From NCBI RefSeq assembly GCF_964204645.1, contig NC_134033.1, positions 2,252,131 to 2,316,130 of the forward strand: a DNA stretch of 64,000 nucleotides. The letters run 5' to 3'. The DNA is from Tubulanus polymorphus. Taxonomy: Eukaryota; Animalia; Nemertea. A program made the position numbers and the translations under genes. Of the stretch, positions 25,701-62,304 are shown piece by piece; within the stretch, counting starts at the first letter, position 1, and every line of letters starts with the position of its first letter. The notes under the pieces are model-generated. The model saw only the letters and a list, made by a program, of their open reading frames with translations. It was not told where the DNA came from and did not search any database.

Positions 25701-26391
25701 AAATTGAATTGAATTGTAAAACGTTCGATTCGAAGTGAATCAGTTCGAGGATCAATCCTACTAAACATTGGTCAAATCCAGCTTACAAATAGTTAGGTGT
25801 AGCCCATGCGAGCACTTTGACCACAATCTAAAGCTTAGCGGATACTGACGTATTCAGCATTTCTACATGAAATTGAACGTCCTTGAGATCACTCGCTGGT
25901 CTAACACGCTTTGAATCGTCCAGTAGAATTTAAAGTATTTGTTTTTTTTTTAATGTTGGCCTTTCGCAATTGCTCTGATTGCTACCGTGCCGATTAAACC
26001 AACCCAAATCGCGACCGGAAGACTCAAACTCTTCCGGAATAAACTAAGGAGCTCCACGAGTCACATGAATCATGGCGAGTAGACATTTTTTGGAGTCAAA
26101 ATGTCTTATCACCATGATATAATCTCAGTAAACTGCAGAGCTGTAGGATAGTCAATCCAAACTTATGTTTCAAAAATGAGCGCAAATTATCGCAACAATG
26201 GGGATCTCGAGGGACCGCCACAAAATGGCGCCTAGAAACTGGAAAATTATCTATTGTGAATCATTGTATTCGTTCATCTAATGCGGTCACGTGAGTCCAA
26301 ACGATGTCGAACCCAAGTTTTAGGATTTCAAAGTTCAAAACCGATTTATAGATAGGCAAACATTATAAGGGGACTCGTGTCAAACTGTAGT

Positions 26392-29300
26392 TTATTTACT
26401 GGATGTCGTCAATCCTAGTCGTCGTTTATTGCGTTCACGAATAGATTTCATATCGATTGTAAGTATTGTATAAAGAAGCGGATTCAGAGACGAGTTGATC
26501 GGTAAAAATAGAACGGCCAGCCAAGCGGCCACCTGGTTCGGTATCTCGACCGAAAATACGGCGCAAAACTGAACGATTATTATCGGTAGCCAGCAAAATA
26601 GATTACAAAGATTGATTACTAAACTCCTTCGAGCTAAAACCAGTTCGGTAGGATCGGCTCTTCCCGAGCCCGACCTACTTCCAGATACGAGTTTATACAT
26701 CTGAGCGTACGTCGTCATTATCGTAGCCAATATGGCCGCATTAAACAAGGCAAAAATAGCAAATGAATAGTGCCAGCCATTGACGTCGATCGTCAGTAAA
26801 TTCATAGGCAAACAAACTCCGGTTGTACCGTAAAAATTGTGTCCGAAGTAAGACGACGATGACAGCGGTAGAATAGAAACTGTGCTCATAACGAGCCAAC
26901 AAATGCAGCAAATCCCGATAACGTATTTAGGAGTTATGATCGGACTTCTAGAAAAAGGGTTGACGATATTTGAATATCTCTGACGCGTTAGAATTAAGAG
27001 AAAAGTCAGGGAACCTTCGCACGAAACGGTGACAATAACCCCTGAGAGACGGCATAATGAGCTATCCGTCCAGGTTTCAGAATTCAGATAATAAACGCCT
27101 TCGAACACGTAGTCAGCTCCTGCGATCAAAAACAAATAGACCGACATCAGAAAATCACAACCGGCAATATTTATGATGAGGATATCTGAAGATGTGTTAC
27201 GTGTTCCGGTGGATTCCATCCGCAAAGCTTGAACGCGAAATAAGATAACGATACTGTTAGCGAGAAAACTGAAAGATGCGATCATCCAGATGATGGCTCT
27301 CAGTACAGCGTTACCCATCAGGTCAGAACAGGTGGAAAATTGATCAGCTTCGGGAAGACATCGGTCAACATTCGGTGCCATGCAGCAAAATTTGTAAGCA
27401 TCCGAAGCGAGGTATTTCAATGATGTAAGATCGCCAAGAACGTTTCCTTTTACAAATATCACTTCGGCATTTTTGACAAGGTCTAGAATTTCTAGTTTAG
27501 CCAGTCCAGAAAAAGCATAACTGGAAATATAATGTATTCTATTACTGCTGATATTTAACGACTGTAATGCGGATAAACCTTTAAATACATTTTCACCGAG
27601 AACCGATATAGAAAGTCCGTGAAGATCGAGAGTAGTAAGTGACATCAGACCTCGAAAACTACCGTCTTCTAAATGTTGCAGCGGATTTCCGATAAGAAAT
27701 AGTTGTTTTAAACCGATCAAACCTGCGAATGTATTAGCAGATAATGATGTTATGCGGTTGTGTGTAAGGTCTAATGTGTATAGATTGTTGAGATTAGAAA
27801 ACGCGTTTGGAACGATGTAAGACAAATTATTGCCCGAAATATCGAGAAAACGAAGATAAATGAAAGAGTTGAACGTCGACTCGTTAAATACGGCTCGGTT
27901 ATTCGACAAAATTAAAACCCGAGTTGATTCTATAAAACGACCAGTAATATCTGATAAAAGAGCATTTTCACAATCGATGAAATGACCCCGGCAATTACAA
28001 CGTTCAGGACACGTGACCTTACAGTATGACTCGTCATCCGAGTTATGTTTACAATTTACGACACCGTCGCAAACTTCAGATTGCGGAATACATCGTTTTT
28101 CCTGGCCGCATTTAAACATTCCCGGACACGACCAAGTCTCGCAGTTTCGTTCATCTTCTGAATTAGGACAATCGGATCGACCGTCACAAACGTGTCTGAT
28201 CGGTATACAGTAAGATGCCGGACATTTTATAGTACCAGCCGCGCATTCGAAGTCATTACACGCGAGTATATGTTCAAGATTTCTACATACCGGGAAACCA
28301 ATCGGTAACCTTTCTAAAATACACCTTTCGTGTCGGGAATAACAGCGAGGAGAATTAAACGAACATCTTTGTTCATCCGATTCCTTACACAGATCTGTGA
28401 AACGAGTCGAACATTGATTGTCATCATTACAGTAAACCTCGGGATTCACTGTCATATTAGTAACCAATTCGTCTTCTTCGAGACTTCCGCTACAATCCAC
28501 GACACCATCCCGATACAACTGAAAACTAATACATTCACCGTCCGCGCACGAGAACCCCTGACAAAGTTCGGGAGTGCATCCAACCTCATCGGAACCGTCT
28601 TTACAGTTGGCTAGTCCGTCACATCGTTTATAACTATCGATGCATTGGTGATTGGAACAGCGATATTGCGTAGATAAACACGGTGGATGATAGCACGAGT
28701 TCTCATCCGAGCCATCGACGCAATCTCTCATAAAGTCGCAGAAACCGCTAATCGATATAACCTGTCCATCGTTACAGCGGAACTGACTGTGTAAATTGAT
28801 ATCCCTACAATCGAGTTCATCTTCACCGCGTTGACAGTCGTGTCTGGTATCGCATACGCGATGGTCGCTGATACATCTTTGATCGTTACATTCAAACTGC
28901 CACGATTTACAGCCGCTTATAGAAGCTAACTCTTCACCAGTTACATTAAAGGTACACAACACGGAATGTACTTTATGTTTTGTATCATCGAAAGGTTTCA
29001 ATAACCATTTCACTGATTGAATATAAGTAATTTCATTTCTGGTCACCAATGGTTTGATAACTTTAAATCCGTCGCGGTCCATTGTCAGTATAGCGCCATA
29101 TTGATGACGATATTGAAATTCACTGACCAAATTATTCATATCGCTTTCTGTATTTGAAGTCATTCTTACTATTTCGGCGCGGATGCTGTGACACATTTCT
29201 CTAGCACTCCGAATATTCAAACCTCGATTGTTTTTCCAGTCGGTTAGTATTTGATAACATCGTCCGGAAATAGTTACCCAACCTCTTGGACAGATTGAAT

Positions 29301-32300
29301 TAATCAAAGTAACATCGGGAATCATTTGATCTATTGTTTTATTTAAGTCTGTATTTGTTGAATTGTTCGCATCGTTTATCGTTGAATTGTGTTTGTTTTT
29401 GATGTTGATTCTCTCGGATTCACAAATGAATGTCGTGTGCGTCTCCTCGATTTGACACGGGAATCGAACCCAGTTCGCCGATCCTCGTGGATTATTCAGT
29501 ATCATCACCGTACACGGCATATTGACGTCATTTATCGGTTGTTTTCTTAGCGGAGATATCAATCCTCGAATAACTTCTGGTATCGTTTCATTAATAACAG
29601 GTTTATACCACTCTGTGTAGCTCAATGGTTTACCGTCAGTCCACGTGTAATAACCATCATTCTGTTTCGTGAATAAAATGAAATATATCACTTCTTTAAA
29701 AATCTTTCGATTTTAATTCATATTAGAATGCATTAGTCTTACCTTCCATTTTAATCCAATCATCATTATGAGCGCTTTTAATGTATAAGCCATTCGGAGA
29801 AGTTCTGTAGCGAATAATCTTTTGATCGAAATCATTTCCTGTTCTGAGTTGATACTGAGTAGATGTCCCGCGTACTTCTGTCTACAGTATATTTCAGCGT
29901 TCTCCCAATTCAGACGTTCATCTCTGATGAATCTGATGCAGGAAATTCCGGAATCCAGAAATCCTTGTTTACAGTAAAAATCATCGAAATGTTTAATCGG
30001 TAACGACTCGTGTAAAGTGTATTGTATTTGAAATGTCGGAATGAAATTGTTTACTTCAAAACGCAAAGTATTATCTGTTAAACTATAAAATATAAGTCCA
30101 CGAACCGCGTTGTTATCACATATTTTAGTATCATATTGAGAGTCAATAGTTTTGAAATATTCACCATTATGAAAAGGTTTATAATTCATTAGTTGTATTA
30201 GAATAATCGGATCATTCGCTTTATTGTTGTATTTTTCACATGAAACTGGTCCAATAAATTTGACAATAAATCTGTAATATTGAAATATATTTTGTTGTAT
30301 CGGGTTTTCAAATCTATATGAAATAGATTTTGATGTACGTCCTGCCCGACCTGGATAGTTCGGTGACTGCACGAGTCCACATTTATCTTTAGTAGTAACT
30401 GGGAGACGGGAACCGGCAAGTCCCAAACTATCCGCTTTTTTAACTCCTAGACATTTACGACGTAGTTTAACTATTAGTGGTCGCCGCCAGAATCCAAACC
30501 CATTATCTGTGAAATCTACAGTGTTTAATACGAGACTGTTATTAAGAAACTGATTACTCAAACTCAAAAACTGATCACATGGCAATGACATCTTGAGAAA
30601 ACATCGGTCAATTTGATATTCGTGTTCTGATAATGTGTGAATTTTTTTCAAGCGAAAGCGTCGATTTTCAGGTGTAATCACGAGACAGTGTGACGTCATA
30701 TTGATCTGACGTTGTTCTTCCTGTAGAACATACCTGTCACAATCAGTAGGAACAAATTGAAGAGATGATCTGAACGGATCACCAACTGATAACTGATTGT
30801 TATAGTAATAAGCGTATGCTACTACAGTAACCGGTCCACCTGATGTAATCAGGCTGACGACAGATCGACCGTAGTATGAACCAGGACAATACGGACCATA
30901 GCGTCTAGCTGTGAAATTACTACCATCAAATATATAAAAACCAGCTCGATCACAGGTTTCTGATAGCACTGTTAGTTTCAACTGTTCTTCATAGATGTTC
31001 ACTTTCCAGTTTAGTTGTAATGTAGTTACACGATACAATGTATTCTTTGATCTCGGGAACAATCGATAAGCTGATATTGAGTTTCTGTATGAATGCTGAA
31101 ATATAAGAGAATTGATTACAGCATTGAACGTTTACAATACGACAATTTCAAACCACTCACAACCTGAAAATATCGATAATAGTTCTCCTTGTAATCCAAA
31201 CTAATCTAAATTCTTCCACTAATCATCATAATTACTTTGCGTAAACAACATGTGCTTTGGGTTACACATACCCGCTGTTATTCCAAGTTTCTCGGTAAAG
31301 GTTCACTGGTCAAAATCGCCATCAAAATCATAGATTATTACAATGATTCCATTACACGAACCTAATTTACAAATCATTGTAATAAACTTACCGATATCTG
31401 CGGCTTGTTGACGTAGACGTCTGATATTGTTATTGATTTCACTTCAAATTCTATTTTCAAATTCGATCTTACAAAATCCGATGTCGTTAAAACGCACAGA
31501 ATCACGAGAAATCCGTCTGATTTTACACTCAGAGATTTAAGATGGTTAAAACTGAGTAAAATATCAGTTCTCACAATACGTAACCCTTCCTGTTTATATA
31601 CACCAACGACACCTGGTGACGAGACGAGATCACGTGTCCAGTTGAAGACGACGTACTGCAGAACATCGACTGTCATAGACCAGCAGTATAAGTGTTTAGA
31701 CTGAGTTACTATATGTGGTATTCCATCAATTGTAGTGAGCAATCCTGATTTATTATAGAATTGAATTAACGGGTTAGAGATGTTCCAATCTGATATTTTG
31801 TAATCTTGCACGAGTAGCCGCGACTTAAACGACACAGTTGGAATGACACTTTTAAATTCTACACACGCTTTATTAGTTTTAGTATAAAACGATGAAGGCG
31901 GATGTCCGGTTTGTTCTCGTATAAGAGCTATAGGTTCACTGGTGCTGTTCCATCCGTCGTAAATTTCAGGACGAGTTTTTATTGGATCCTCACCTGGTTT
32001 CAACCTGAAATCTATCTGTAAAAACGTTAAATTCATTCGTCTGGCATCCCGATCCATTCTAACAACAATTTACATCGCCAGGCAGAAATCATGAATCCAT
32101 AACCTGTTTGAGTTGGTAATTCTTTTACTGCATGTTTGTAACATGTATGTACGATTTTCAAGCGACTCTGTTCCTCAAAACGATATATGATGTAAACCCG
32201 ACTACCTCGCGCTCCATCGACGTTACTCCTAAACAACAACGAAATCAAACCGTTACTGCGGATATCTAATTGTTTTCTTCCGGTAGCGCAGAGTTTGTTG

Positions 32301-32617
32301 TCGGACTCGCCGACGAGAAGGTAGTTTTCGTTACAGAATATCGACGGCTCGATGTCGTAGTAAACTTGAACGAGAAAACTTCCCGGTAAAGAGCTGTTGA
32401 CGAACCAACGACATTCAACACCGCGCACTAACGACGGATAGTTCGGTGAAACGATGTAACCAGACGTAGAATCGACGGAGTATTGAGTGTTGTTACAAGA
32501 TGAACTGACTGTAACAGACGCGGCTTCCTCGACAGAGTTTGCGCGATCAGCCCGCGTAAATATACAGTCTCCGCAAGCGATCAGTAAAACTACGAACAAC
32601 GCTTTCATTCGCTGCAT
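26392..32617 (-). pseudogene. GRL101-like CUB/CTL/LDLa/LRR GPCR, copy B, frameshifted in exon 1 and otherwise intact
   Basis: Exons 32617-31392, 31095-29743 and 29661-26392 mirror copy A. GAC-GGGTTTGC-AATG in A is GAC-G-AATG in B (7-nt loss at 32037/32038), giving TGA at 32035-32033; all downstream frames and splice sites are open. Confidence 0.8.
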
Positions 32618-33172
32618 ATTGAACACAATTCACGCTTCAAAACAAACACATTTCTAACTAGTTCCAGGTTTGCGCGACATTTCTCATAAGAGTCGCTGTT
32701 AAGTAATGACAAGTTGTCAGAATGTCAGAAGTTGACGAATTGATCGAGTCCAATTATTTTGTAAAAAGATCTCCCATCAAACTGGCGCCAGTCTCGTATT
32801 TCTGTTACTTTCACCTGCGCTCGGTTTCGCAGTAATTACCGCGGTTTCTAAATTTAGACGTGTTTCAATATATCTTGTTTATAATCATGTGCAATTATTT
32901 CTCTAAAAATATTTACTGTCGTTCCCGAACTGCGTTCAGTTTGTGATAATATTCTATGACATTTTCTATCTTTACCTCAAAATATTCTGCGTCTCTGTAA
33001 AACACTTCGTCAATATCTGTTCTGATAATTCACACTCTACAGTCAATATAATAACTGAGTTGAAGCTAAGCGAAGCGCGTGGATATCTGATTGTGGTGAG
33101 TAAGGTCTTGTTCGGTACAGATTGTTTTGAAGAAACAACAGCAACCAAGTAAGACGGGCATGACAGCGGTAG

Positions 33173-46471: not shown

Positions 46472-47799
46472 TTATTTGGCGCCGGATGGTTCTTGGTGAT
46501 CCGGGTCGCAGGATAAATAGTACAGCGTAGCGGGCGCGTCTCGCAGCGACGGATCGGAACCTTCGATGCACCGACATTTCGTACCACTGTCTGTTATGTA
46601 GGTTTCGAACGGCTCCAAGAATTCTCCTTTGTGTCCGCGGCAACCTTCAAAATACATGATTGAAAAAATACCATTCAGAATTTGATCTTTGATCTTTAAA
46701 TCAAACCATCAGCAGGGCTCCACAGTCGCCTGTGGCAATGAGGACTTCGAGCCACCAGCTATCCCGCTAGATGGCGTGCGTAGCAGTGCGACAACCCCGT
46801 CAAAATCTAGTTCACTTTCGATGAACTTTCATCTAGATTTTTAGCTTCCCTCGTCAGAAATTAGGCAAATTACTCCTCTTGATAAACTCAGAAGATCTTA
46901 AGGTTCATATTTAAGGTGGTTTATACTGATCACCATTCAAAGAATTTGAGAAATTTTGGACAGACTTTAATCGAATATGTGAAGAAATCCGCGAGTTGTT
47001 GTCTGAGTGCACACTAGCGAACCTGGTGAATCCTCGCTTGCCACAAGCGGAATCCTCGATTGCCACAGTCGAACGTTGAGTCCTCAAAGAGGATTCCACT
47101 CGTGGTAAGTGTGAATCCACTTCCCACATTTTCCGCATATTTTGCTTACCCAGAAGTTTACAGTGCGCGAATGCCGGAAGCGGGACTTCTGGCAGAGGGT
47201 AAATCTCATGAAGCCAGGTGTATTTTAGTTGTATATCGCGGGTGCAATAGCACCTGGACACCGCGCCATCTGAGCTTCTCTGCCACGAGCTGCCAACGTC
47301 GTGTTTGGTTCCATCTTTTTCTTTACATTCTTGAAAAACAAAGATCACAATTAGAAAAATAGATCGTGACCTCTAGCAATGATCATAACTAAAAACGTTC
47401 TGCCCGCATAAAAATACAAGATAGAATTGCTGGATTCGAACCGAACCATGGAACAAAGAACTAAAGCAGTAAAACAGGAAAGGCTAGGATTCGAACCTCG
47501 CGCACAATCGAGCAAACTTCATGCGAGGAATCGACTATTGAAGTCAATTTTCACAGAATCAGACGTTAAGACGATTTGACGGCTCATTACGGTTATCACA
47601 ACTAAGCGTCGTTCCCGAAACCATAATATATGTTAATTTATGTTAAAACATTCTAATTTATGTATAATCTGTTTGTTACCTGTTGGGCAGTTGATAGCGG
47701 TAAAACAGTCCTGCTGAACTTGGTGTCCTGCTATTTCGCATAGATCTAAGTAAGGGTTGAGGCGATCGAGGTTATCTGGTGTATCCAGTCGCACAATCG
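46472..47799 (-). CDS. Small Cys-rich protein with two tandem 4-Cys modules (VWC/FnI/beta-microseminoprotein-like); start codon unresolved
   Basis: Phase-1 exons 47799-47680 (less certain), 47329-47150 (CKEKDGTKHDVGSSW..CYC..C) and 46644-46472 (CRGHKGEFLEPFETY..CRC..C, TAA); AATAAA on - strand near 46320; in-frame ATG at 47848 is a possible start. Confidence 0.7.
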
Positions 47800-50689: not shown

Positions 50690-52185
50690 TGAACGCTCAG
50701 TTTTCGAAAGTGTGCCGATAAAAGTCTCAAGTTTATAGTTCATTTTCAATTAAAAATGTCTCAGGTAAAGTTTTGAACACATGTGAAGTGTGGACGATCA
50801 GTTTTTGAAAGTGTGCTGATAAAATGTCTAATATCTGGTGTTTGTAGTTCATTTTCAATTAAAAATGTCTCAGGTGAAGCACTGAACATATGTGAAGTGT
50901 GGACGATCAGTTTTTGAAAGTGTGCTGATAAAATGTCTAATGTCTGGTGTTTGTAGTTTATTTTCAATTAGAAATGTCTCAGGTGAAGCACTGAACACAT
51001 GTGAAGTGTGGACAATCAGTTTTTGAAAGTGTGCTGATAAAATGTCTAATGTCTGGTGTTTGTAGTTTATTTTCAATTAGAAATGTCTCAGGTGAAGCAC
51101 TGAACACATGTGAAGTGTGGACGATCAGTTTTTGAAAGTGTGCTGATAAAATGTCTAATGTCTGGTGTTTGTAGTTTATTTTCAATTAGAAATGTCTCAG
51201 GTGAAGCACTGAACACATGTGAAGTGTGGACGATCAGTTTTTGAAAGTGTGCTGATAAAATGTCTAATATCTGGTGTTAGTAGTTTATTTTCAATTAGAA
51301 ATGTCTCAGGTGAAGCACTGAACACATGTGAAGTGTGGATGATCAGTTTTTGAGTGTGCTGTTAAAATGTCTAATGTCTGGTGTTTGTAGTTTATTTTCA
51401 ATTAGAAATGTCTCAGGTGAAGCACTGAACGCATGTGAAGTGTGGACGATCAGTTTTTGAAAGTGTGCTGATAAAATGTCTAATGTCTGGTGTTTGTAGT
51501 TCATTTTCAATTAAAAATGTCTCAGGTGAAGCACTGAACACCTGTGAAGTGTGGACGATCAGTTTTTGAAAGTGCGCTGATAAAATGTCTGGTGTTTGTA
51601 GTTCATTTTCAATTAAAAATGTCTCAGGTGAAGCACTGAGCACATGTGAAGTGTGGACGATCAGTTTTTGAAAGTGTGCTGATAAAATGTCTGGTGTTTG
51701 TAGTTCATTTTCAATTAGAAATGTCTCAGGTGAAGCACTGAACACCTGTGAAGTGTGGACGATCAGTTTTTGAAAGTGCGCTGATAAAATGTCTGGTGTT
51801 TGTAGTTCATTTTCAATTAAAAATGTCTCAGGTGAAGCACTGAACACCTGTGAAGTGTGGACGATCAGTTTTTGAAAGTGCGCTGATAAAATGTCTGGTG
51901 TTTGTAGTTTATTTTCAATTAGAAATGTCTCAGGTGAAGCACTGAACACATGTGAAGTGTGGACGATCAGTTTTTGAAAGTGTGCTGATAAAATGTCTAA
52001 TGTCTGGTGTTTGTAGTTTATTTTCAATTAGAAATGTCTCAGGTAAAGTTTTGAACGCATGTAAAGTGTGGACGATCAGCTTTTGAAAGTTTGCTGATAA
52101 AATGTCTAATGTTTGGTATTTGTTGTTCATTTTCAATTAGAAATGTCTCAGGTGAAGCACTGAACACATGTGAATTGTGGACGAT
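50690..52185. repeat. 109-bp satellite, with 101-bp variant units
   Basis: About 14 units, reverse complement of the 10680-11310 array. Confidence 0.95.
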
Positions 52186-52276
52186 CGATGTCAAACTTGA
52201 TGATCAAAAATTGTAACTAGGAGTCAAGAGTTGTAAGAGTCAAGTCAATTTTCGGACTGTTGGTTGATTGACTAAT

Positions 52277-52920
52277 CTACTGGAAACTCTTTTTCAAGAA
52301 TTCCACGCAATGACTGTAACACCTTTCACCCGATTTGATAAACGTGCGCGAAAAAACGTCTCCGTGATAACTGAATTTACCCATATAAAGTTCGACGTCG
52401 ACGCCCGCTTTGCGCAGCCGACCGACGTACAAGATCCCCTCGTCGCGGAGGCAATCGTGTTGGGCGACGGCCACGTACGCAGGCGGCAGTCCGTCGAGAC
52501 GCTTCTGCATCAGCGGCGAAAAATACGGATCGACGACGAAATCGGCGACGTCGTCCGAAAGCGCGCGGTCGCCATCTCGGACGGCGTCGGAGACGAAACC
52601 GTCGCGAATTTCGACGGGTAAATCACGATAATCGACGTAGCGGGAATAGTCGCGTTTCAGGGATTGCGTCGTGTGATTGTTGCGTAGGAAATGCGACGCG
52701 TATTTCGGGTCGATGCCCATATACTGCAGGTGAACGAAGGCGACTCCGCGCGCAGACGAGATGATCGGGTGGTCACGCGTGCGCACGTGCGACGGTAGCT
52801 GGAAATCGAACGCTTGCAGCACCGGGTGTAGGAGAACTTGCAGACGGATTTCGGGAACGTTTGTTTCGTGTCTCATTTTCTGAGCGACGGCGGCGGCTAA
52901 GTTACCCCCGGCGCTATCTC
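52277..52920 (-). CDS. Hydrolase terminal exon C (GDSAGG, HDCLRDE, YHGD)
   Basis: Acceptor TTTCCAG, phase 1, open to stop; Ser-Asp-His triad residues present. Confidence 0.9.
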
Positions 52921-55900
52921 CTGGAAATATAAATGAGATCATAAATGTCGTATCCTAAACGGAGTCCAGTTCAAATGCGCTGCAAATTTGGTATAACCTC
53001 AGCATAACTCTATTCGATGTATCAGTCATCTCTCCCTAGGGAGAAGTTACATCGGGGAAGCAACTAAGCGCTTGGAGTCATCTATCAGGCCGGGTACCCG
53101 TCTACTCCTGGGCGATGAGAGGCAATGAGGATAAGTGTCGTGCCCGAGGACACATTAGTTCATTTTCAATGTTTTAAACACTACAATCTAAATCTTATTT
53201 CGATCTTGAAATAGGGATTGCATCCGATTCATTTTGGTTGAAAGATTTGGTTTAATTCGTTTTGTTTTGGTGTCCCTTACAAACCCACCACCTCTGCCGG
53301 AAACGAAACAGGGGCTTTGATTTTGAAGATAGTTGTGTGATCAAATTTACAGAAACCAGTTATTTAAATCAAAGTAATTGGAAATTTCGGTTCCGGTTCG
53401 TTCGAACGATCTTCCAACCAATCTGAACCGGCAAGCGTAACTGAACCGTAGAACTGGAATAGCGTGCAAATAGCTAAATGAATCTAAGCGCTTTATTTAA
53501 ATCATATTTCTAACAGAATACTGAATCTTGAAATCGAAGTTTCTTAATAAAGGAATCCGACACCGAGCCACAAAAAATTGTCTTCTTACTCTAAATATCG
53601 CGCGATCGATTACTGAAGTGTTTTTCTGAGAAAGTTGATGATATGCTCGATGCCTCGCGCCCCCGGTCGATTCAAATACCACGTCAGTACGTCGTCGTGA
53701 AACCCGACGCGATCGTAATAAACCTCCGTCTGGACGCCGGCTCGACGCAGACGATCGGCGTATAGCAACGCGTCGTCGCGGAGAACGTCGTAACCGGCAG
53801 ACGACACGTACGCAGGCGGCAAGTCGGCGAGTCCGTCCTCATCGGGTAACAACAGCGGACTAAACCTGGCGTCGAGAACGAATCCTTCCGAGTCCGCGTC
53901 GAATTCCGAATCTTCGTTTTCGCTCGCGTTGACGGGATCCGAATCGACGTCTCGCCGGAAGTCAGCCGGTAGATTTCGCGGGTCGACGTATCGCGAGTAT
54001 CGTTCGCGAGACGGTTTCGAAACGTGTCGATTTCGACGGAATTTCTCGGCGACGTTGCGGCCCTTCCCCGCGTACAACGAAGAGTACCGCGCGGCGACCT
54101 CAATCGAAGTGACGATCGCGTATTTATCGTTCTCGAGGTACGACGGTAACTGGAAATCGAACGCTTGCAGCACCGCGTGGATGAGAACTTGCAGACGGAT
54201 TTCGGGAACGTTTTTTTCGTGTCTCATTTTCTGAGCGACCGCGGCGGCTAAGTTACCCCCGGCGCTATCTCCTGGAAATAAAAACAAAATACCCAGATAA
54301 TCGGTACGAGCTAGAATTTGAATGCAAGCAATCTTTTCCTGTCGAAATTCGATTTCTTTTTTTGATGATATTTGAAAAATCCTTCAGACCAGATTCTGTA
54401 GCAAACTGACAAAATGTCCGAGTAATCAGTCAGTGCTACAATCTAAATCCAATTCAGTCCTTTCCTGTCGAAATTCGATTTCTTTTTTGGTGAAATTTGA
54501 AAAATCCTTCAGACCAGATTCTGTAGCAAACTGACAAAATGTCCGAGTAATCAGTCAGTGCTACAATCTAAATCCAATTCAGTCCTTTCCTGTCGAAATT
54601 CGATTTCTTTTTTGGTGAAATTTGAAAAATCCTTCAGACCAGATTCTGTAGCAAACTGACAAAATGTCCGAGTAATCAGTCAGTGCTACAATCTAAATCC
54701 AATTCAGTCTTTTCCTGTCGAAATTCGATTTCTTTTTTGGTGAAATTTGAAAAATCCTTCAGACCAGATTCTGTAGCAAAATGACAAAATGTCCGAGTAA
54801 TCAGTCAGTGCTACAATCTAAATCCAATTCAGTCCTTTCCTGTCGAAATTCGATTTCTTTTTTGGTGAAATTTGAAAAATCCTTCAGACCAGATTCTGTA
54901 GCAAACTGACAAAATGTCCGAGTAATCAGTCAATGTTACAATCTAAATCCAATTCAGTCTTTTCCTGGCGAATTCGATTTGTTTTTTTTTTGTGTTATTC
55001 AAAAATCCAAAGTAATCAATCAGTACATCGAATTCAGTCTATTCCCGTCAAATTCTTTAATGAAAGAATATTTTCGATGAGTACTCTCAATACCGGTCAA
55101 TCCTTTACTTAGAACTCTCGAAACCAGAACAATGTAACCGGGCTAAAAATTTTACAGGTGGAAATGTAAATACAGTGGAACCTCGTTATAACGAACTCGG
55201 ATATAAACGAACGATTCATCGGATACAGCGAATATAGATGTGGTCCCAAGTAAGACCATGTCCATTTGGTTAATTTCATACTGGACATAACAGTGAACTA
55301 TTGGTTATAACGAATATATTTTCTGGTCCCCTGAAGTTCGCTGTAACGAGGTTCCACTGTACAGTTCAAGTCCTTTATAACGCCACTCACTGTTGGAACC
55401 AACCGAAAGTATGGCGTTATGAAGAGAATATATTTTCATTGAATTCGATTAAGATTTTTTCTCTGAAAAATCTTGGCCTTGAAGTGAGTTGTGGCATTAG
55501 AAAGGATGGCAGCCTAATAACAGACTCAGTGAAAAACCCATCAAAGATAATTCCTCGCAGAAGAGAATGAACGAATCGAGCATCTCAAATCGAGCATGAA
55601 AACCACTGAATAAAACTCTACTCATTTCTTTATTCGTTATATAAAACTTTTGATCAAAATTCACACATTTTAATAATATGTACATGATTTGCATATATGT
55701 TAATCAATAACTGGCAGACGGTAATTACCGTTCTAACATCATCGGAATGTAACGATGTGAAATACTGATTTTATGATTATTTTCATGATTCAGCAACAAA
55801 ATCTCGGGATTATTCTCATAATATCTCGGGACAATTCATACATTTACAGAAGACTTCTCTGATTCTCAACTCAGATATCACTCTCAAGTCAAAAGATCCG

Positions 55901-58900
55901 ACTTGATCAGAGTCTACTGTACCATCGAACTCAGATACTGTTTTAAATCAGAAGATCTGCCTTGAGCGGAGTCTACTGTACCATCCAACTCAGATATCAC
56001 TCTCAAGTCAAAAGATCAGACTCTTGAGTGGAGTGTACTGTACCATCCAACTCAGATATCACTCTCAAGTCAAAAGATCCGACTTGATCAGAGTCTACTG
56101 TACCATCGAACTCAGATACTGTTTTAAATCAGAAGATCAGACTTGAGCGGAGTCTACTGTACCATCCAACTCACATATCACTCACAAGTCAAAAGATCCG
56201 ACTTGAGCGGAGTATACTGTACCATCCCACTCGCATGTCACTCACAAGTCAAAAGATCAGACTTGAGCGGAGTTTACTGTACCATCCAACTCACATGTCA
56301 CTCACAAGTCAAAAGATCAGACTTGAGCGGAGTCTACTGTACCATCCAACTCAGATATCACTCACAAGTCAAAAGATCAGACTTGAGCGGAGTCTACTGT
56401 ACTATCCAACTCAGATATCACTCTCAAGTCAAAAGATCTGACTTGATCAGAGTCTACTGTATTATCCAACTCAGATATAACTCTCAAGTCAAAAGATCAG
56501 ACTTGAGCTGAGTCTACTGTACCATCCAACTCAGATATCACTCTCAAGTCAAAAGATCAGACTTGAGCGGAGTCTGCTGTATCATCCAACTCAGATATCA
56601 CTCTCAAGTCAAAAGATTTGACTTCAAAGTCCAAAATGGAGTTACTTTAGCAGCAAATGTCTACTGTATACGAACATTGTATAAAGTCACTCGTAAATTT
56701 CTAAGAATATTTCATTAAGACTTTTCAGTTTTCATCTCAAACATCTGCTTCAAAAATGCGATCAAATCGTTGAATGTTCTCGCGCCGGCCGCAAAATTAC
56801 CGAACCGCAAAACGTCTTGATGAAACCCGCGTTCGTAGTATTTCAAGGTCGTCACGACGCCGTCTTTGCGCAGACGCCGCGCGTATATAACGGCGTCGTC
56901 CGCGACGACGTCGTAGCCCGCGGCGACCACGTACGCCGGCGGCAATCCCTTCAACGTTTTCTGCATCAACGGCGCGAAATACGGATGCAACACGAAATTC
57001 TGCATCGCGTCCGACAGAGTCTCGTCGCCGGCGTCGACGATGCCGACGCGGTCGCGCGCGTAATCGCGTCGATGCGCCGGAGGCAGAATCGCGAAATCGA
57101 CCAGGTACGAGTACGTCGTTTTCAGGTATCGCGACGTGTGGTTGTTGCGCGCGAAGAACCACGCGATCGCCGGGTCCTTGCGCATGTATCCGAGCCAGGC
57201 GCGCGCCACGCCGCGCGTCGACGCGCCGACAGGTCGGCGTTCGTTGCGCGCGTACGACGGCAGACGGAAATCGAACGCTTGCAGCATCGGCGTCAGCAAC
57301 ACTTGTAACCGCAGCGACGGCAGTCCGCGCGGCGTGCGCATGAATTTCTGCGCGACGGCGGCCGCCAGGTTTCCGCCGGCGTCGTCACCTGCAATAAAAG
57401 ACGGCAGACGGATTTCGGATCGGAGGCGTCGAGAAAACGTCGGCAATACCGACGGTCGAAATGCGACAAAAGCATGCGCAGCGTGAAATACTCAAAACAA
57501 TCCTCAACAAATGAAATCAATTTTCTCGTAAAAATATCAAATCCTCCAAGTGAGTTATAAGAGGCAGATAGGAGACGATATCCGGTTTATGGGGAGTCGA
57601 AATTGATTTTCATAAGGAGCTGAGCCAGTTACACAGTCTGATCAAAGTGACATAAGATCTTAAGACTGGTCTTGAATCTTAAGACTGGCTGTATAGTAGA
57701 ACCACCGGTAAGATGACCGTAAGACTGGTGTTAAATTGTTTGATCGGTTATACAACTAAAATCAGCTAAGACTGCTGGTCTTAAGTTGTTAGATTGGCTA
57801 TAGAACCAAAATGAGCTCAGCCTGGTCTTAAATTTTAAGAACAGTCTTAGACTGGCGCCGATGGCTAATCTCGATGGTAAATCTACTAAATCCAAAACGG
57901 ATTAAAGATTTGTCGCGAGCGGCATTTATTTTCAAGCGTAATTACGCGAAGCTACGTTCGAATTCAAAAACTTACCCATAACGACGATTTTCGACGGATC
58001 GATTTTGAACTGCGAGCCGAATTCCAATAGGTGGCGCGTCACGGCGAAACAGTCGTCGAACGGAGCCGGAAACGGGTGTTCAGGAGCCAAACGATAACTG
58101 AAAAGATTAAACGGTGAAAGATATCGTATAACCACAGGCACACGTTGCAGTCATCAGGACCTGCATCAACGAGCCGTCGGTTAGAGATTGGACTCGGTAG
58201 ATTTCAAATAAGTTCATTTCTGACGTTTCTACTGTAGAGTCAAATCTTAATTCTAGAGTAGAACTAAATCCAGCTAATCTAACTCGAATCCAACTAATCT
58301 AACTCGAATCCAACTAATCTAACTCGAATCCAGCTAATCTAACTCGAATCCAACTAATCTAACTCGAATCCAACTAATCTAACTCGAATCCAACTAATCT
58401 AACTCGAATCCAGCTAATCTAACTCGAATCCAGCTAACCTAACTCGAATCCAACTAATCTAACTCGAATCCAGCTAATCTAACTCGAATCCAAGATTTTG
58501 ATCGCCCTCTGATCAGTCAGTTTTATGTAATCGAAATCATCATTTTCAATTTTTCAAATGGATTTTTTTCGAACCCACGAAAAATATCGATGTTATCAAA
58601 CATTCAAGTCTCAAAAAAAGATTCGGTTTCGTTCTCCCAGTTTTTTTGGAATTAGTTAATTTCAACTCCTCTTAATCTAACAAACTTTCAGTGGAACCAT
58701 TTCCTTGCTTTCAGTGTACTATTAGGATTTCTGATGAACCTGATAAACCGTTTGTCCGCGTCTGGAACCGAAATTTATATTCTATGATAAAGATAAATTC
58801 ACTTACTCGACTGATATGACGGTGAATTGAGTACGTCTGGCCAGTTCTCTAGTGAATTCATCGTGAGTATCTGAAAAATATTTATGAAATCAACTTCATT

Positions 58901-61900
58901 TTCGGCGTTATCCGCAACAGGTTTTAGCGGGGCAGCTGCCCCTTTCATTTTTACATCCACCCCTCTGTCAATCAGCCACTCCTTATAAAATATCTGCTGC
59001 CCCTACCAGAGTTGATGTCAATATCCTCTCAATGCTGATGATTGCTTTGAAATGTATTGGCCAGTTTTATATATATCGCAACTGTGTTTCCCGAAACAGG
59101 TTTTAGAGGGGCGGCCATTCATTTTACATCGACCGCGCTCTGAAAATCAGCCAACCCTAATGAAACATCTGTCAATATGTGGATGTCAATATTCTCTCAA
59201 TGCTGATGGAAAATATTGCATTCAATGGGACAAATAGATGGATATTACACCAAAATTAAGCTTTAAAAATCTATACTTTTTGTGGGATCGAAGCCTTGCT
59301 ACTTCAGCAGCCGCGATGTCATACACTTAACAAATGGATGCAGCACGACTTTAAAATTCCAGCATTTGGACTGAACACTGTTTTTTTTATTAACTTTATT
59401 AACTTTCAGCGCGTCTACACCACAGTGCGGTGTATGAATCGGTGATGGATTTTGCTAGTACACCGCACTGCAGTGTATTGGTGTAATGAGTAATTAGTTT
59501 TTATCTCTATTGAAAGATGGCAGCACCTGTCAAACATAGTGAAATATTAGTAACTAACGATACACCGCACCGCGGTGTAGACGCACTTTAGCGGTATTCC
59601 CGTTATTAAACACACAAGGGCTGAATTTTTCAAAATTTTCAAATTATCTCCAGCACTATAGGGTATTGATAAGTCAGCACTGAAAGGGTTAAGAAGGCGA
59701 GGTTTTTGTTTTACGTACCGATACTCATAATGGTCCAGCCTCCGCCGTGGAAGTAAACGATCGCTGGGCCGTACGCGCTGCCTTTCACCGGTTCATAGAT
59801 GCGAACTCTTACGCCTTCGATTTCCGTCGTCTTTATCTGAAATACGAAACGAAAAATGTTCATCGAAACGACAATATCGTCTCTCACATCGGTCGGCAGA
59901 CGTTCAAGGACGATGACTTTTAGAGCCCATTACAAGATATTCAAGGCCTTAAAATTGGCCCATCCCCGTTCGAGGACTCTTCAGGACGTCCACGAACCAC
60001 GATGCAGGGTCCGATCTAAGCGCTCGTCCGATTGCCCGGGACAAGTATATTCTTATCAGGGCAAGTAGGTTTACCATTATCACTTGTCCCCCGGGCTAGC
60101 GCGATTTGATGTCAGAAAACTTTTTTCCCACTCGTTACAACGGATGATAGTGCCATCAATCAAACTGCCGGTGTAGGATAAGTAGTTTTTGGAGGGGGCA
60201 AGCAAAATTTTCAGATATGCTTGCCCCCAGGGCAAGTGGCTTTCGTTCCTTACATCGGACCCTGCGATGGCTCAAGTCTGTTAACTAACAGAAGTTAACA
60301 GCTTATATTTAAGATAAGTCTAAGACCGACTAAGGAAAGATTAATTTGTTTTCAAAACCTAGAATTTTGTACCCGATGTGACGATTCTAGAAATTTCAAC
60401 TGCGTACAACTAACAGATTTTCAGGTCCCCTATGGTTTGTTGTTACGAGGTTCCACAGATTCTGAAGTCACTCGAACCACTTATTTTGTTACGAGCTTCA
60501 GTGACTTAATTTTATAGTCTATCTAACAAATAAAGATTTCAAACTGGTCTATAATAATAGCAAAAATAAATAAAGAGGATATTTCAAGATACTCCTGACT
60601 TGACCGTACAACTGATCCCAGCAGTTTTTACAGATAAACCACAAAGAAAAGTTGAAATTTTTTTAAAGAAAGTTGGTCGTCTGGCAGCAGTTTTTTCTAT
60701 GTCAGAAGGCTTCAACCCGATCACTTATCTTAGCTAAACTTTTTTCTCCAAATCTAAGAAACGCCGATAGGAAAATAACGAAAGTTCTAAAAGGAAAATG
60801 AAACGGTGCTTACGTTTAGGTCGGGGTCGTCGATTTTCATACCGGCCACGTACGCCGTATTCAGTATCCATCTCATCGTCTCGTGCTCGGTCGCTATTCC
60901 TAACTTAGAGCTGGCGAATGCCTGAAAAATATAAAAGAAAGCGTCAATTTCAGTGAGGGTTCTTTCACCACTTGATCATTCCATTATTTTACTATTATTT
61001 TGGTCTTTCTTCGAAATCTTATTTTTTTGGAAAATTCCAGTGAGGGATTTGTGGTCCTGACACCAGGGTTCTTATAGATCAGGGAATCCAAAAATAACTT
61101 GATATTTCCCTGACACTTGACCAAAAATTCCCTGATTAAATTATAAGATATCCTCAGTGAGGGCTGTTTCTTATTAAGAGGTACCTTGTGTCACTCGTCA
61201 CCAGCAAGAACAACAAGACACCAAAAATTCAAATTCCCCGATTAAATCATAAGATATCCTCAGTGAGGGCTGTTTCTTATCAAGAGGTTCCTTGTGTCAC
61301 TCGTCACCAGCAAGAACAACAAGATACCAAAAATTCAAATTCCCTGATTGAATTATAAAATATCCTCAATGAGGGCTCTTTGTTATCGTGAGGTTCATTG
61401 TGTCACTCGTCACCAGCAAAAACAACAAGACACGAAAAATCTAAACTCCCTGATTACATTATAGGATATCCTCAGTGAGGGCTGTTTCTTATCAAGAGGT
61501 TCCTCGTGTCACTCGTCACCAGCAAGAACAACAAGACACCAAAAATTCAAATTCCCCGATTAAATCATAAGATATCCTCAGTGAGGGCTGTTTCTTATCA
61601 AGAGGTTCCTTGTGTCACTCGTCACCAGCAAGAACAACAAGATACCAAAAATTCAAATTCCCTGATTGAATTATAAAATATCCTCAATGAGGGCTCTTTG
61701 TTATCGTGAGGTTCATTGTGTCACTCGTCACCAGCAAAAACAACAAGACACGAAAAATCTAAACTCCCTGATTACATTATAGGATATCCTCAGTGAGGGC
61801 TGTTTCTTATCAAGAGGTTCCTCGTGTCACTCGTCACCAGCAAGAACAACAAGACACCAAAAATTCAAATTTCTTGACTTTTTTGGGAATTTCAAGAAAG

Positions 61901-62304
61901 GAGCTTAGAACACTAAACTGGAATTCCTTTGGTTTCCTAGATCTGTAAAACGATATTGAACGATATTGTTCTACCATCCATCCAGGATCCATTCAGAATA
62001 GTTCTGTCAAGTTCCAAATTTCTTGACTTAGGAACTTTTTGGGACTTTCCAAAAGTTCAAGTTTCTGACATTTTGGATAAATTAAAATAATGAGTAGTTG
62101 CCATACTTAATGGACGGCTGACAAGAGCGAAAATGGATTTCTTAAAAGTACACCTACTATATGGCCGGTAAATTTCAGTCCTGCTAATAGCAATCGGACT
62201 TTCCACGGTTCTTCCAGATCGTCGGGTAAAGGATGGTACATGTAATAAGCGATAATTCCAGTCCATAGCGCCAACAACAACACTGAATGCTTCAAAACCG
62301 ACAT
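52277..62304 (-). CDS. Arylacetamide deacetylase / neutral cholesterol ester hydrolase-like HSL-family alpha/beta hydrolase with three alternative last exons
   Basis: Shared exons 62304-62158 (N-terminal signal anchor, [13 protein letters not shown]), 60921-60814, 59836-59719 (VRIYEP, YFHGGGW), 58870-58807 and 58097-57976 ([10 protein letters not shown], ends phase 1). These join in frame to any of 57388-56715, 54271-53610 or 52920-52277, giving 410, 406 or 400 aa. Confidence 0.9.
53085..53153 (-). mobile_element. CORE-SINE-like fragment
   Basis: Minus strand GTGTCCTCGGGCACGACACTTATCCTCATTGCCTCTC..CCCAGGAGTA..GGGTACC resembles the CORE/MIR consensus as recalled; not database-verified. Confidence 0.45.
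53610..54271 (-). CDS. Hydrolase terminal exon B ([17 protein letters not shown])
   Basis: Acceptor TTTCCAG, phase 1, open to stop; AATAAA on - strand at 53497-53492. Confidence 0.9.
54336..54975. repeat. 125-bp tandem repeat, 5 units
   Basis: TTTCCTG(T/G)CGAA at 54336, 54461, 54586, 54711, 54836 and 54961. Confidence 0.95.
55173..55359. mobile_element. Tc1/mariner-pogo-like MITE
   Basis: TA-CAGTGGAACCTCGTTA ... TAACGAGGTTCCACTG-TA. Confidence 0.8.
55866..56622. repeat. 60-bp satellite, ~12 units
   Basis: Reverse complement of the 9030-9484 array. Confidence 0.95.
56715..57388 (-). CDS. Hydrolase terminal exon A ([17 protein letters not shown])
   Basis: Acceptor TTTTATTGCAG, phase 1, open to stop; nucleophile codon is GAC (Asp). 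Confidence 0.88.
58262..58493. repeat. 20-bp minisatellite
   Basis: AACTCGAATCCA(A/G)CTAATCT repeated about 11 times. Confidence 0.95.
59399..59692. mobile_element. piggyBac-like MITE copy
   Basis: Colinear with 1267-1560, ends GCACTGAAAGGG-TTAA. Confidence 0.75.
60005..60264. mobile_element. MITE with 16-bp TIRs and 5-bp target duplication
   Basis: CGATG-CAGGGTCCGATCTAAG ... CTTACATCGGACCCTG-CGATG. Confidence 0.7.
61125..61875. repeat. ~106-bp tandem repeat, ~7 units
   Basis: ATATCCTCA(G/A)TGAGGGCT...GTGTCACTCGTCACCAGCAA units, with an apparent 3-unit higher-order duplication. Confidence 0.92.

What the first reader, a model, noticed from the sequence alone, without database searches (positions are those of the whole stretch)
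52277..58097. One hydrolase gene with three interchangeable catalytic halves (tandem mutually exclusive last exons)
Seen: one set of N-terminal exons (anchor, HGGG oxyanion loop, YRLAPE; 186 codons + 1 nt) ends in phase 1 at 57976. Three homologous, stop-free terminal exons follow (57388-56715, 54271-53610, 52920-52277). Each has its own AG acceptor in the same phase, exactly at the first G of the GxSxG motif. I found no upstream-type exons between them, only satellites and MITEs. Known: in AADAC/NCEH1/HSL-family enzymes the nucleophile, acid, His and second cap segment all lie C-terminal of this point. Inference: 3' splice or poly(A) choice swaps the whole triad and much of the substrate pocket onto a constant membrane-anchored N-half, a mirror image of the variable-first-exon UGT1A design. 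The exons are strongly diverged yet all intact, which argues that all three are under selection.
Basis: partly seen in the sequence, partly recalled or inferred. Interest (0 to 1): 0.92.

Follow-up and report, generated by a model that had tools for sequence, protein, structure and literature searches.

The report
Hydrolase gene with alternative catalytic end-exons
A ribbon-worm (Tubulanus polymorphus) esterase gene has one set of front exons and three duplicated, intact last exons that each encode the catalytic half; the public annotation already joins the first and third to the shared front, and use of the middle one is unproven.

Summary
On the minus strand, five constant exons (62304-57976; 186 codons + 1 nt) are followed by three homologous terminal exons: tA 57388-56715, tB 54271-53610, tC 52920-52277. 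They are 44-48% identical. Each has an AG acceptor in phase 1 at the first G of the nucleophile motif. No other N-terminal exons lie in the window.

The window is Tubulanus polymorphus. RefSeq already models isoform X1 (constant part + tA) and X2 (constant part + tC). It also models X3, which skips all three cassettes and joins non-hydrolase exons at 47799-46475. tB is in no public protein I could find. No RNA run was available, so no junction was checked with reads.

tB is intact. It keeps Ser, Asp, His and 12 of 13 family-invariant positions, and has a strong acceptor and an AATAAA signal. Its first 147 nt are 95% identical to tC, which points to gene conversion. tA has Asp in place of the nucleophile Ser, unique among 105 motif-bearing homologues.

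The annelid Owenia fusiformis has the same layout, one N-terminal set and three terminal cassettes, apparently by independent duplication.

Verdict: a real case of alternative last exons made by tandem exon duplication. That kind is known (Drosophila pipe, insect GSTs) and this case is partly annotated already. Interest is moderate.

The parts
62158..62304 (-). Constant exon 1 (aa 1-49): start codon and hydrophobic N-terminal anchor helix
   Evidence: Exact match to P0001/P0002 residues 1-49, donor gtaggt. Predicted helix 2-22.
60814..60921 (-). Constant exon 2 (aa 50-85)
   Evidence: Exact match to P0002, acceptor ttttcag, donor gtaagc.
59719..59836 (-). Constant exon 3 (aa 86-124 + 1 nt) with the HGGG oxyanion-hole motif
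   Evidence: H115 and G116 are invariant in the family alignment.
58807..58870 (-). Constant exon 4 (aa 125-145, split codons at both ends)
57976..58097 (-). Constant exon 5 (YRLAPE ... KIVVM + first G of Gly187). Shared phase-1 donor G|gtaagt.
   Evidence: Pfam Abhydrolase_3 E 3e-13.
56715..57388 (-). Terminal cassette tA (223 codons + stop), used by RefSeq isoform X1. GDDAGG (Asp at the nucleophile position), acid motif reads YDVVADD, His kept. No AATAAA/ATTAAA within 700 nt after the stop.
53610..54271 (-). Terminal cassette tB (219 codons + stop), in no public protein model found. [13 protein letters not shown] and GFHDD intact. Strong acceptor. AATAAA 113 nt after the stop.
52277..52920 (-). 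Terminal cassette tC (213 codons + stop), used by RefSeq isoform X2. GDSAGG, HDCLRDE and SYHGD intact. AATAAA at +255 and +364, inside the downstream satellite.
54138..54284 (.). tB copy of a 147-nt tract 95% identical to 52787-52933 in tC. It runs from about 13 nt before the acceptor through the [10 protein letters not shown] codons. Probable gene-conversion tract; the rest of the two exons is saturated.
   Evidence: pS 0.10 inside, 0.68 outside; family D5.
52787..52933 (.). tC copy of the same conversion tract
46475..47799 (-). Three downstream exons (47799-47680, about 47330-47148, about 46645-46475) joined to the exon-5 donor in RefSeq isoform X3. They encode a Cys-rich tail with no Pfam match.
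54335..56624 (.). Spacer between tA and tB: 125-bp satellite (54335-54987), MITE-like element with 27-nt inverted ends (55171-55361), 60-bp satellite (55867-56624). No coding homology.
50731..52186 (.). 109-bp satellite (13.6 copies) directly downstream of tC. It carries the AATAAA hexamers.

Best explanation
This is one AADAC/NCEH1-like gene (HSL family, Pfam Abhydrolase_3) of the nemertean Tubulanus polymorphus.

Five constant exons encode the membrane anchor, the first cap helices, strands beta1-beta5 and the HGGG oxyanion hole. The last constant exon ends in phase 1, one base into the Gly of the nucleophile elbow. Three tandemly duplicated terminal exons follow. Each has its own 3' splice site and stop codon; a canonical poly(A) hexamer follows tB and tC but not tA. 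Each encodes everything from the nucleophile to the C-terminus: helix C, beta6, the large cap insertion, beta7 with the acid Asp, and beta8 with the His.

Which acceptor is joined to the single donor, together with where the transcript is cleaved, decides which catalytic half is fused to the constant half.

Shown at annotation level: tA (isoform X1) and tC (isoform X2) are used, and transcription can run past all three cassettes (isoform X3).

Inferred: the middle cassette tB is also a working alternative end, about 0.6 likely. The tA isoform, with Asp for the nucleophile Ser and a changed acid motif, is either catalytically dead or chemically altered rather than a simple substrate variant.

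The cassettes arose by local duplication of the last exon in the nemertean lineage and have diverged deeply under purifying selection. A recent gene conversion homogenised the 5' ends of tB and tC.
For: Anatomy.

Family: (PF07859). (best solved relatives are EST2-type esterases; Ser, Asp and His align).

Organism and isoforms. X1 and X2 have identical N-halves and 50% identical C-halves. The X3 tail maps to 47799-46475.

Not separate genes: no N-terminal exons between the cassettes. The four paralogous loci in the 268-Mb genome each have one N-set and one terminal exon.

Local origin: tA, tB and tC (plus the nearby paralogue C9b) form one clade, SH-aLRT 93-95, with tB and tC as sisters, 88.

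Constraint: dN/dS 0.42-0.45 with dS above 1. 48-51 of 64 family-conserved columns are kept in each cassette. By reading one search's alignment against the invariant columns, tB keeps all family-invariant C-half positions except P219A. A neutral simulation gives P(no stop) 0.012 at 0.4 substitutions per site.

Signals: strong acceptors for all three. AATAAA after tB and tC.

Fold: both isoforms are predicted with pLDDT 93-94 and pTM 0.93. The junction at residue 187 falls at the end of strand 178-188, just before helix 190-202.

Parallel case: the Owenia fusiformis locus has one N-set and three intact phase-1 terminal cassettes.
Against: No junction was seen in reads. The only candidate RNA run held none of the region, so X1-X3 rest on RefSeq's automatic models, whose evidence I could not inspect.

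tB is absent from all three RefSeq isoforms and from every protein found. It has the longest end branch of the three. It has drifted at semi-conserved motifs: NNHTS to NRHVS, and the DPxFAPL motif to DARFSPL.

An intact ORF cannot exclude recent silencing: P(no stop) is 0.25-0.5 for 0.05-0.1 neutral substitutions per site.

A test of whether tB loses fewer family-conserved than variable ancestral residues was not significant, p = 0.23.

tA has no canonical poly(A) hexamer.

High AlphaFold confidence is expected for any family member and is weak evidence.
Confidence: 0.6

Rival explanations
1. Two-way switch only. tA and tC are the working alternative ends. tB is a silent or decaying relic of the exon duplications that is no longer spliced in. 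It looks intact because silencing is recent and because gene conversion from tC refreshed its 5' end.
For: tB is missing from RefSeq isoforms X1-X3 and from all proteins found. It has the longest end branch and drift at semi-conserved motifs. The conversion tract shows its splice site and nucleophile region are recent copies, not independently conserved. Short neutral periods leave an ORF intact with probability 0.25-0.5.
Against: Outside the conversion tract tB keeps all 7 family-invariant positions, including the acid Asp and the His, while about 55-60% of its other residues differ from tA and tC. It has the strongest pyrimidine tract of the three acceptors and a canonical AATAAA at +113. 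RefSeq evidence for a nemertean probably comes from few libraries, so a tissue- or stage-specific isoform could be missed (inference).
Confidence: 0.27
2. One functional gene end only. The other cassettes are leftovers of tandem gene duplicates that lost their 5' exons, and the extra RefSeq isoforms are splicing noise or read-through products without function.
For: X3 shows that the exon-5 donor is also joined to unrelated downstream exons, which looks like read-through. tA lacks the nucleophile Ser and two other near-invariant residues.
Against: All three cassettes are intact after divergence to 44-48% identity with dS above 1 and dN/dS 0.42-0.45. P(no stop) is about 0.01 if a cassette were neutral over its whole branch. 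All three acceptors keep the exact ancestral phase. An independent three-cassette locus exists in Owenia.
Confidence: 0.1
3. Three separate genes. tB and tC have their own promoters, or receive a 5' end by trans-splicing, and encode stand-alone proteins.
For: An ATG lies 22 nt upstream of the tC acceptor in frame, giving a 221-aa ORF.
Against: No N-terminal-type exons lie anywhere else in the 64 kb. A C-half alone lacks strands beta1-beta5 and the oxyanion hole, so it should not fold. RefSeq X2 joins tC to the shared exons. The ORFs open only a few codons upstream of the acceptors.
Confidence: 0.03

Closest known systems
Drosophila pipe (sulfotransferase) and PGRP-LC: tandemly duplicated, mutually exclusive terminal exon clusters (PMC9013439)
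   Same: Constant 5' exons are joined to one of several homologous, tandemly duplicated 3' terminal cassettes. The cassettes arose by tandem exon duplication.
   Different: In those genes the cassette encodes a whole domain (my own knowledge for pipe and PGRP-LC). Here the cut runs through a single alpha/beta-hydrolase fold at the nucleophile elbow, so the active site is composite. The organism is a nemertean, not an insect. No competing RNA structures were found here.
Insect glutathione S-transferases with alternative 3' exons (Drosophila GSTO2, GSTD11, GSTT3 and GSTZ2, PMC4195677; Anopheles gambiae GSTD1 with four alternative 3' exons, from my own knowledge of Ranson et al. 1998)
   Same: A detoxification-type enzyme gene in which shared 5' coding exons are combined with alternative homologous exons that encode the substrate-side part of one catalytic domain.
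   Different: A different fold and chemistry. In the GSTs the catalytic residue sits in the constant N-terminal part (own knowledge). Here the whole Ser-Asp-His triad is in the variable part and only the oxyanion hole is constant.
Vertebrate AADAC / NCEH1 (HSL family, Pfam Abhydrolase_3) and bacterial EST2-type esterases (PDB 1EVQ, 1QZ3)
   Same: Same family by Pfam and by alignment. It has the HGGG oxyanion loop, GDSAG elbow (tB, tC), DxLRD acid, His and an N-terminal anchor helix. In the sequences examined here (the four T. polymorphus paralogues and the Owenia locus) a large last exon begins at or near the nucleophile.
   Different: Among the full-length homologues retrieved and pair-compared, only the Tubulanus isoforms combine an identical N-half with a divergent C-half, and only the Owenia model P0116 shows two C-halves behind one N-half. 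tA replaces the nucleophile Ser by Asp.
UGT1A and clustered protocadherins (variable first exons)
   Same: One constant block is combined with one of several homologous variable exons.
   Different: It is the mirror image. There the choice is made by promoter selection at the 5' end; here it is made by 3' splice-site and poly(A) choice. This comparison rests on my own knowledge and was not tested here.

Membership tests
HSL / AADAC family (Pfam PF07859 Abhydrolase_3) | Profile match above the curated threshold | tested here: met
   tA 85.8, tB 79.8, tC 91.1 and exon 5 50.3 bits, against a cut-off of 25.
HSL / AADAC family (Pfam PF07859 Abhydrolase_3) | HGGG oxyanion-hole motif upstream of the nucleophile | tested here: met
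   FHGGGW in exon 3. H115 and G116 are invariant in 35 homologues.
HSL / AADAC family (Pfam PF07859 Abhydrolase_3) | GxSxG nucleophile elbow with Ser | tested here: inconclusive
   Met in tB and tC (GDSAGG). Not met in tA (GDDAGG). GDDAG occurs once among 105 homologues with a motif.
HSL / AADAC family (Pfam PF07859 Abhydrolase_3) | Acid Asp (DxLRD motif) and catalytic His in the C-terminal part | tested here: met
   Asp and His are present in all three cassettes. They align to the acid and His motifs (AQYDPLRD and HG) of an EST2-type structure. tA changes LR to VA within the motif.
HSL / AADAC family (Pfam PF07859 Abhydrolase_3) | Esterase or amidase activity | not testable with these tools
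   Needs expression and assay.
Alternative (mutually exclusive) terminal exons from tandem exon duplication | Two or more homologous terminal exons in tandem, each with its own acceptor in the same phase and its own stop | tested here: met
Alternative (mutually exclusive) terminal exons from tandem exon duplication | Upstream exons present only once, with no promoter-proximal exons between the cassettes | tested here: met
   tblastn of the window. The spacers are satellites and repeats.
Alternative (mutually exclusive) terminal exons from tandem exon duplication | Transcripts that join the shared donor to each cassette | tested here: inconclusive
   tA and tC are joined in RefSeq X1 and X2. 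tB is joined in none. No reads were available.
Alternative (mutually exclusive) terminal exons from tandem exon duplication | A cleavage/poly(A) signal after each cassette | tested here: inconclusive
   AATAAA after tB (+113) and tC (+255, +364). No canonical hexamer within 700 nt after tA.

The most novel reading that the evidence does not exclude
Spiralian AADAC-like genes have repeatedly evolved a 'swappable catalytic half'. This happened independently in a nemertean (three cassettes, 44-48% identical) and an annelid (Owenia, three cassettes, 26-32% identical). All cassettes would be expressed in a regulated, tissue- or stage-specific way. The Tubulanus tA isoform, with Asp at the nucleophile position on the same anchor and oxyanion hole, would be either a new Asp-nucleophile chemistry within the HSL family or a regulated pseudoenzyme that competes with the Ser isoforms.
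Probability: 0.25. Interest if true: 0.65.

Novelty: new member of a known kind. Interest (0 to 1): 0.48.

Why it matters
If all the cassettes are used, one promoter and one membrane anchor would serve several esterases with different pockets, plus one variant lacking the nucleophile Ser. That is a compact way to diversify a xenobiotic or lipid hydrolase. It is also a natural experiment in recombining halves of an alpha/beta-hydrolase at the nucleophile elbow, which is of interest for enzyme engineering.

In practical terms, it flags an unannotated coding exon (tB) in the T. polymorphus RefSeq gene. It also flags a mis-joined gene model in Owenia fusiformis.

The principle is not new. Alternative last exons from tandem exon duplication are established, and two of the three isoforms are already in RefSeq.

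Tried and rejected
1. Read evidence. The one search for runs found four DNA-like runs and one possible RNA run of the species. Laid on 52200-58150 (5,951 letters), the possible RNA run gave zero coverage. The DNA contigs only confirmed the assembly. This gives no verdict on expression.

2. Search for a tB-containing protein. None was found with the tA ORF as query or with the constant N-half as query. The exhaustive representative search with tB found no closer relative than the tC isoform at 49%, so no orthologue was available for a per-cassette dN/dS.

3. Docking/selector-type RNA pairing between the introns. No inverted repeats were found other than one MITE-like element.

4. Fisher test of whether each cassette preferentially retains family-conserved ancestral residues. 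It was not significant for any cassette (p 0.23-1), so I dropped it as an argument.

5. Transcript-derived isoforms for the Owenia locus. Only the deposited fused model was found.

6. Relative locus L001 (ENA ERZ21867824). It has a single terminal exon and no second copy within 10 kb downstream.

7. Literature. I found nothing on alternative catalytic halves in AADAC/NCEH1 genes or on this gene.

8. Joined models. I did not build or search a spliced N-half + tB protein. Exons were searched one by one by reference, so no fold of a tB isoform was made.
Full report
**Observation**

The gene lies on the minus strand. Exon 5 (58097-57976) encodes YRLAPE...KIVVM and ends ATG G|gtaagt, one base into a Gly codon.

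Three long ORFs follow at 57388-56715 (tA), 54271-53610 (tB) and 52920-52277 (tC).
- Each matches Pfam Abhydrolase_3 with E 1e-22 to 1e-25.
- They are 44-48% identical to each other.
- Each is preceded by a pyrimidine tract and an AG placed so that the split Gly codon is completed.
- The ORFs open only a few codons upstream of these acceptors.

A tblastn with word size 2 and E up to 10 finds the HGGG, middle and YRLAPE exons only once in the whole 64 kb.

The spacers contain a 125-bp satellite, a MITE-like element with 27-nt inverted ends, a 60-bp satellite and very high-copy repeats.

**Organism and public annotation**

A protein search with the tA ORF returned two RefSeq proteins of Tubulanus polymorphus, a nemertean.
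- XP_074658049.1 is 'neutral cholesterol ester hydrolase 1-like isoform X1', 410 aa.
- XP_074658050.1 is 'arylacetamide deacetylase-like isoform X2', 400 aa.
- Their first 187 residues are identical. X1 then continues with tA and X2 with tC.

Matching X2 to the window gives the constant exons 62304-62158, 60921-60814, 59836-59719, 58870-58807 and 58097-57976. Together they are 559 nt, or 186 codons + 1 nt.

A search with the constant N-half found a third isoform, X3 (343 aa). After residue 186 it continues with a Cys-rich tail that has no Pfam match. The tail is encoded at 47799-47680, about 47330-47148 and about 46645-46475. In that model the exon-5 donor skips all three cassettes.

No protein containing tB was found in either search.

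The core idea, one gene with alternative catalytic C-halves, is therefore already implicit in RefSeq for two of the three cassettes. I infer that these models rest on RNA-seq introns, because X3 could not come from protein homology. I could not inspect that evidence.

**Reads**

Laid on 52200-58150 (5,951 letters, within the operators' limit), the possible RNA run covered nothing. The DNA contigs were collinear with the assembly across the exons and introns. No junction could be confirmed or refuted with reads.

**Are these separate genes?**

The 268-Mb genome holds four further family loci: C2:27.48 Mb, C3:6.25 Mb, C3:27.30 Mb and C9:2.03 Mb. Each has one N-terminal exon set and a single terminal exon. 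Only this locus has extra terminal exons without N-terminal partners.

A C-half alone would lack strands beta1-beta5 and the oxyanion hole.

**History and constraint**

In maximum-likelihood trees of C-halves, tA, tB and tC form one clade together with the divergent neighbour paralogue C9b. SH-aLRT support is 93 in one tree and 95 in the other. tB and tC are sisters (88). End branches are 0.5-0.7 changes per site. The cassettes therefore arose by local duplication and are old.

Measures of constraint:
- Nei-Gojobori estimates give dS 1.05-1.54 (saturated) and dN/dS 0.42-0.45.
- Each cassette keeps 48-51 of 64 columns that are at least 70% conserved in outgroups.
- tC (as X2) carries all 20 columns invariant across 35 full-length homologues.
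- By reading the three-cassette alignment against those invariant columns, tB keeps all of its C-half invariants except P219A. That includes all seven outside the region it shares with tC.
- tA breaks S189 (to D), the Leu of DxLRD, which is invariant when X2 heads the alignment (to V), and the near-invariant Arg (to A).

A substitution-only simulation gives a 1.2% chance of no in-frame stop after 0.4 neutral changes per site. The chance is 25-48% after 0.05-0.1 changes. Long-term selection is therefore well supported, but recent silencing of one cassette cannot be excluded.

**Conversion tract**

The first 147 nt of tB and tC are 95% identical (54138-54284 against 52787-52933). The tract runs from about 13 nt before the acceptor through the [10 protein letters not shown] codons. 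Inside it pS is 0.10. Beyond it identity drops abruptly to 40-50% and pS rises to 0.68.

The simplest reading is a recent gene conversion covering the splice site and nucleophile elbow. As a result, the tB acceptor and GDSAGG are not independent evidence of conservation.

**Signals**

tB has the longest pyrimidine tract and an AATAAA 113 nt after its stop. tC has AATAAA at +255 and +364, inside the 109-bp satellite. tA has no AATAAA or ATTAAA within 700 nt.

A weak proximal site would fit read-through to the distal cassettes. This is inference only.

**Structure**

The closest solved relatives are EST2-type esterases such as 1EVQ and 1QZ3. GDSAGG aligns to the nucleophile elbow, and the HDCLRD and YHG segments of tC align to the acid and His motifs.

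AlphaFold models of X2 and X1 are confident: pLDDT 93.7 and 92.8, pTM 0.93 for both. Their topology is the same.

The junction at residue 187 sits at the end of strand 178-188, just before helix 190-202.
- The constant half supplies the anchor helix (2-22), two cap helices, five strands and HGGG.
- The variable half supplies the nucleophile, helix C, beta6, the roughly 90-residue cap insertion, beta7 with the Asp, and beta8 with the His.

Identity among the cassettes is 65-91% at the elbow, 35-47% in the cap insertion and 43-48% in the C-terminal core. High model confidence is expected for any family member and is weak evidence.

**A parallel in an annelid**

The exhaustive search with tB found a 606-aa protein containing one N-half and two C-half segments. 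It is an 'unnamed protein product' of Owenia fusiformis. Its locus is L008, on GCA_903813345.2.

The locus has:
- one N-terminal exon set;
- a phase-1 donor, GCA G|gtaaga;
- three intact terminal ORFs at 25514-26173, 28926-29597 and 32117-32896.

Each terminal ORF has an AG at the first G of GDSAG, and each keeps Ser, Asp and His. They are 26-32% identical to each other. The deposited model joins part of the second cassette to the third, which is probably an annotation error.

In the tree the Owenia cassettes do not pair with the Tubulanus ones, so the layouts look independently derived. No transcript-derived isoforms were found for Owenia.

**Mechanism and rivals**

Best reading (0.6): this is a gene with alternative last exons. 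The choice of acceptor and cleavage site fuses one of three catalytic halves to a constant half. tA and tC are documented at annotation level. tB is probably used but unproven. The tA product is catalytically altered or dead.

Rivals:
- tB is a recently silenced relic (0.27).
- Only one end is functional and the other isoforms are noise (0.10).
- These are separate genes, or the 5' end comes from trans-splicing (0.03).

**Comparison with known systems**

Tandem exon duplication that yields mutually exclusive terminal exons is described for Drosophila pipe and PGRP-LC (PMC9013439). Alternative exons that swap part of a single catalytic domain are described for insect GSTs (PMC4195677; Anopheles GSTD1 from my own knowledge).

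Four things are particular here:
- the family;
- the cut exactly at the nucleophile elbow, which leaves only the oxyanion hole constant;
- the Ser-to-Asp cassette;
- the recurrence in two spiralian phyla.

I found no paper on this in AADAC/NCEH1 genes.

**Verdict**

The feature is real. It is a new member of a known kind, partly annotated already, and of moderate interest (0.48).

Exons were searched one by one by reference.

Noticed in passing
window 46475-47799 (minus strand): RefSeq isoform X3 joins the hydrolase exon-5 donor to three downstream exons that encode a 157-aa Cys-rich tail with no Pfam match. I saw no obvious first exon of a separate gene between 47800 and 50730, so it is unclear whether this is read-through into a neighbouring gene or a true fourth ending.
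   Followed up: partly
G000:C9:2025974-2026663 (L007:5978-6703): A divergent paralogue about 226 kb from the window has GDDVG (Asp at the nucleophile position, as in tA). It also has YSITRDD, with Ser at the position of the catalytic acid Asp. His is kept. It groups with tA, tB and tC in the tree. It could be a pseudoenzyme lineage, or Ser-to-Asp may be older than tA.
   Followed up: partly
L008:10001-32899 (Owenia fusiformis, GCA_903813345.2 CAIIXF020000004.1): The deposited 606-aa gene model splices from inside the second terminal cassette into the third. This yields an N-half, a truncated C-half and a full C-half. It is probably a mis-annotation of a three-cassette gene.
   Followed up: partly
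window 56015-56714: The proximal cassette tA has no AATAAA or ATTAAA within 700 nt after its stop. A 60-bp satellite begins about 90 nt downstream of the stop.
   Followed up: no
window 57772-57970, 55185-55383 and 52996-53393: These intron and spacer stretches have summed contig depths of 5,000-166,000 in the DNA runs, against about 25 in the exons. They are very high-copy interspersed repeats packed around the cassettes.
   Followed up: no
window 61125-61871, 58267-58493 and 50731-52186: Further satellite arrays lie inside and beside the gene. One has a 106/318-bp unit in intron 1, one a 20-bp unit (11 copies) in intron 4, and one a 109-bp unit (13.6 copies) after tC. The 109-bp array gives long spurious ORFs.
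   Followed up: no
P0115 (746 aa) and P0120 (828 aa), other species: These database proteins are head-to-tail fusions of two complete family genes (N+C+N+C). Tandem whole-gene duplicates of this family are also merged by gene predictors.
   Followed up: no
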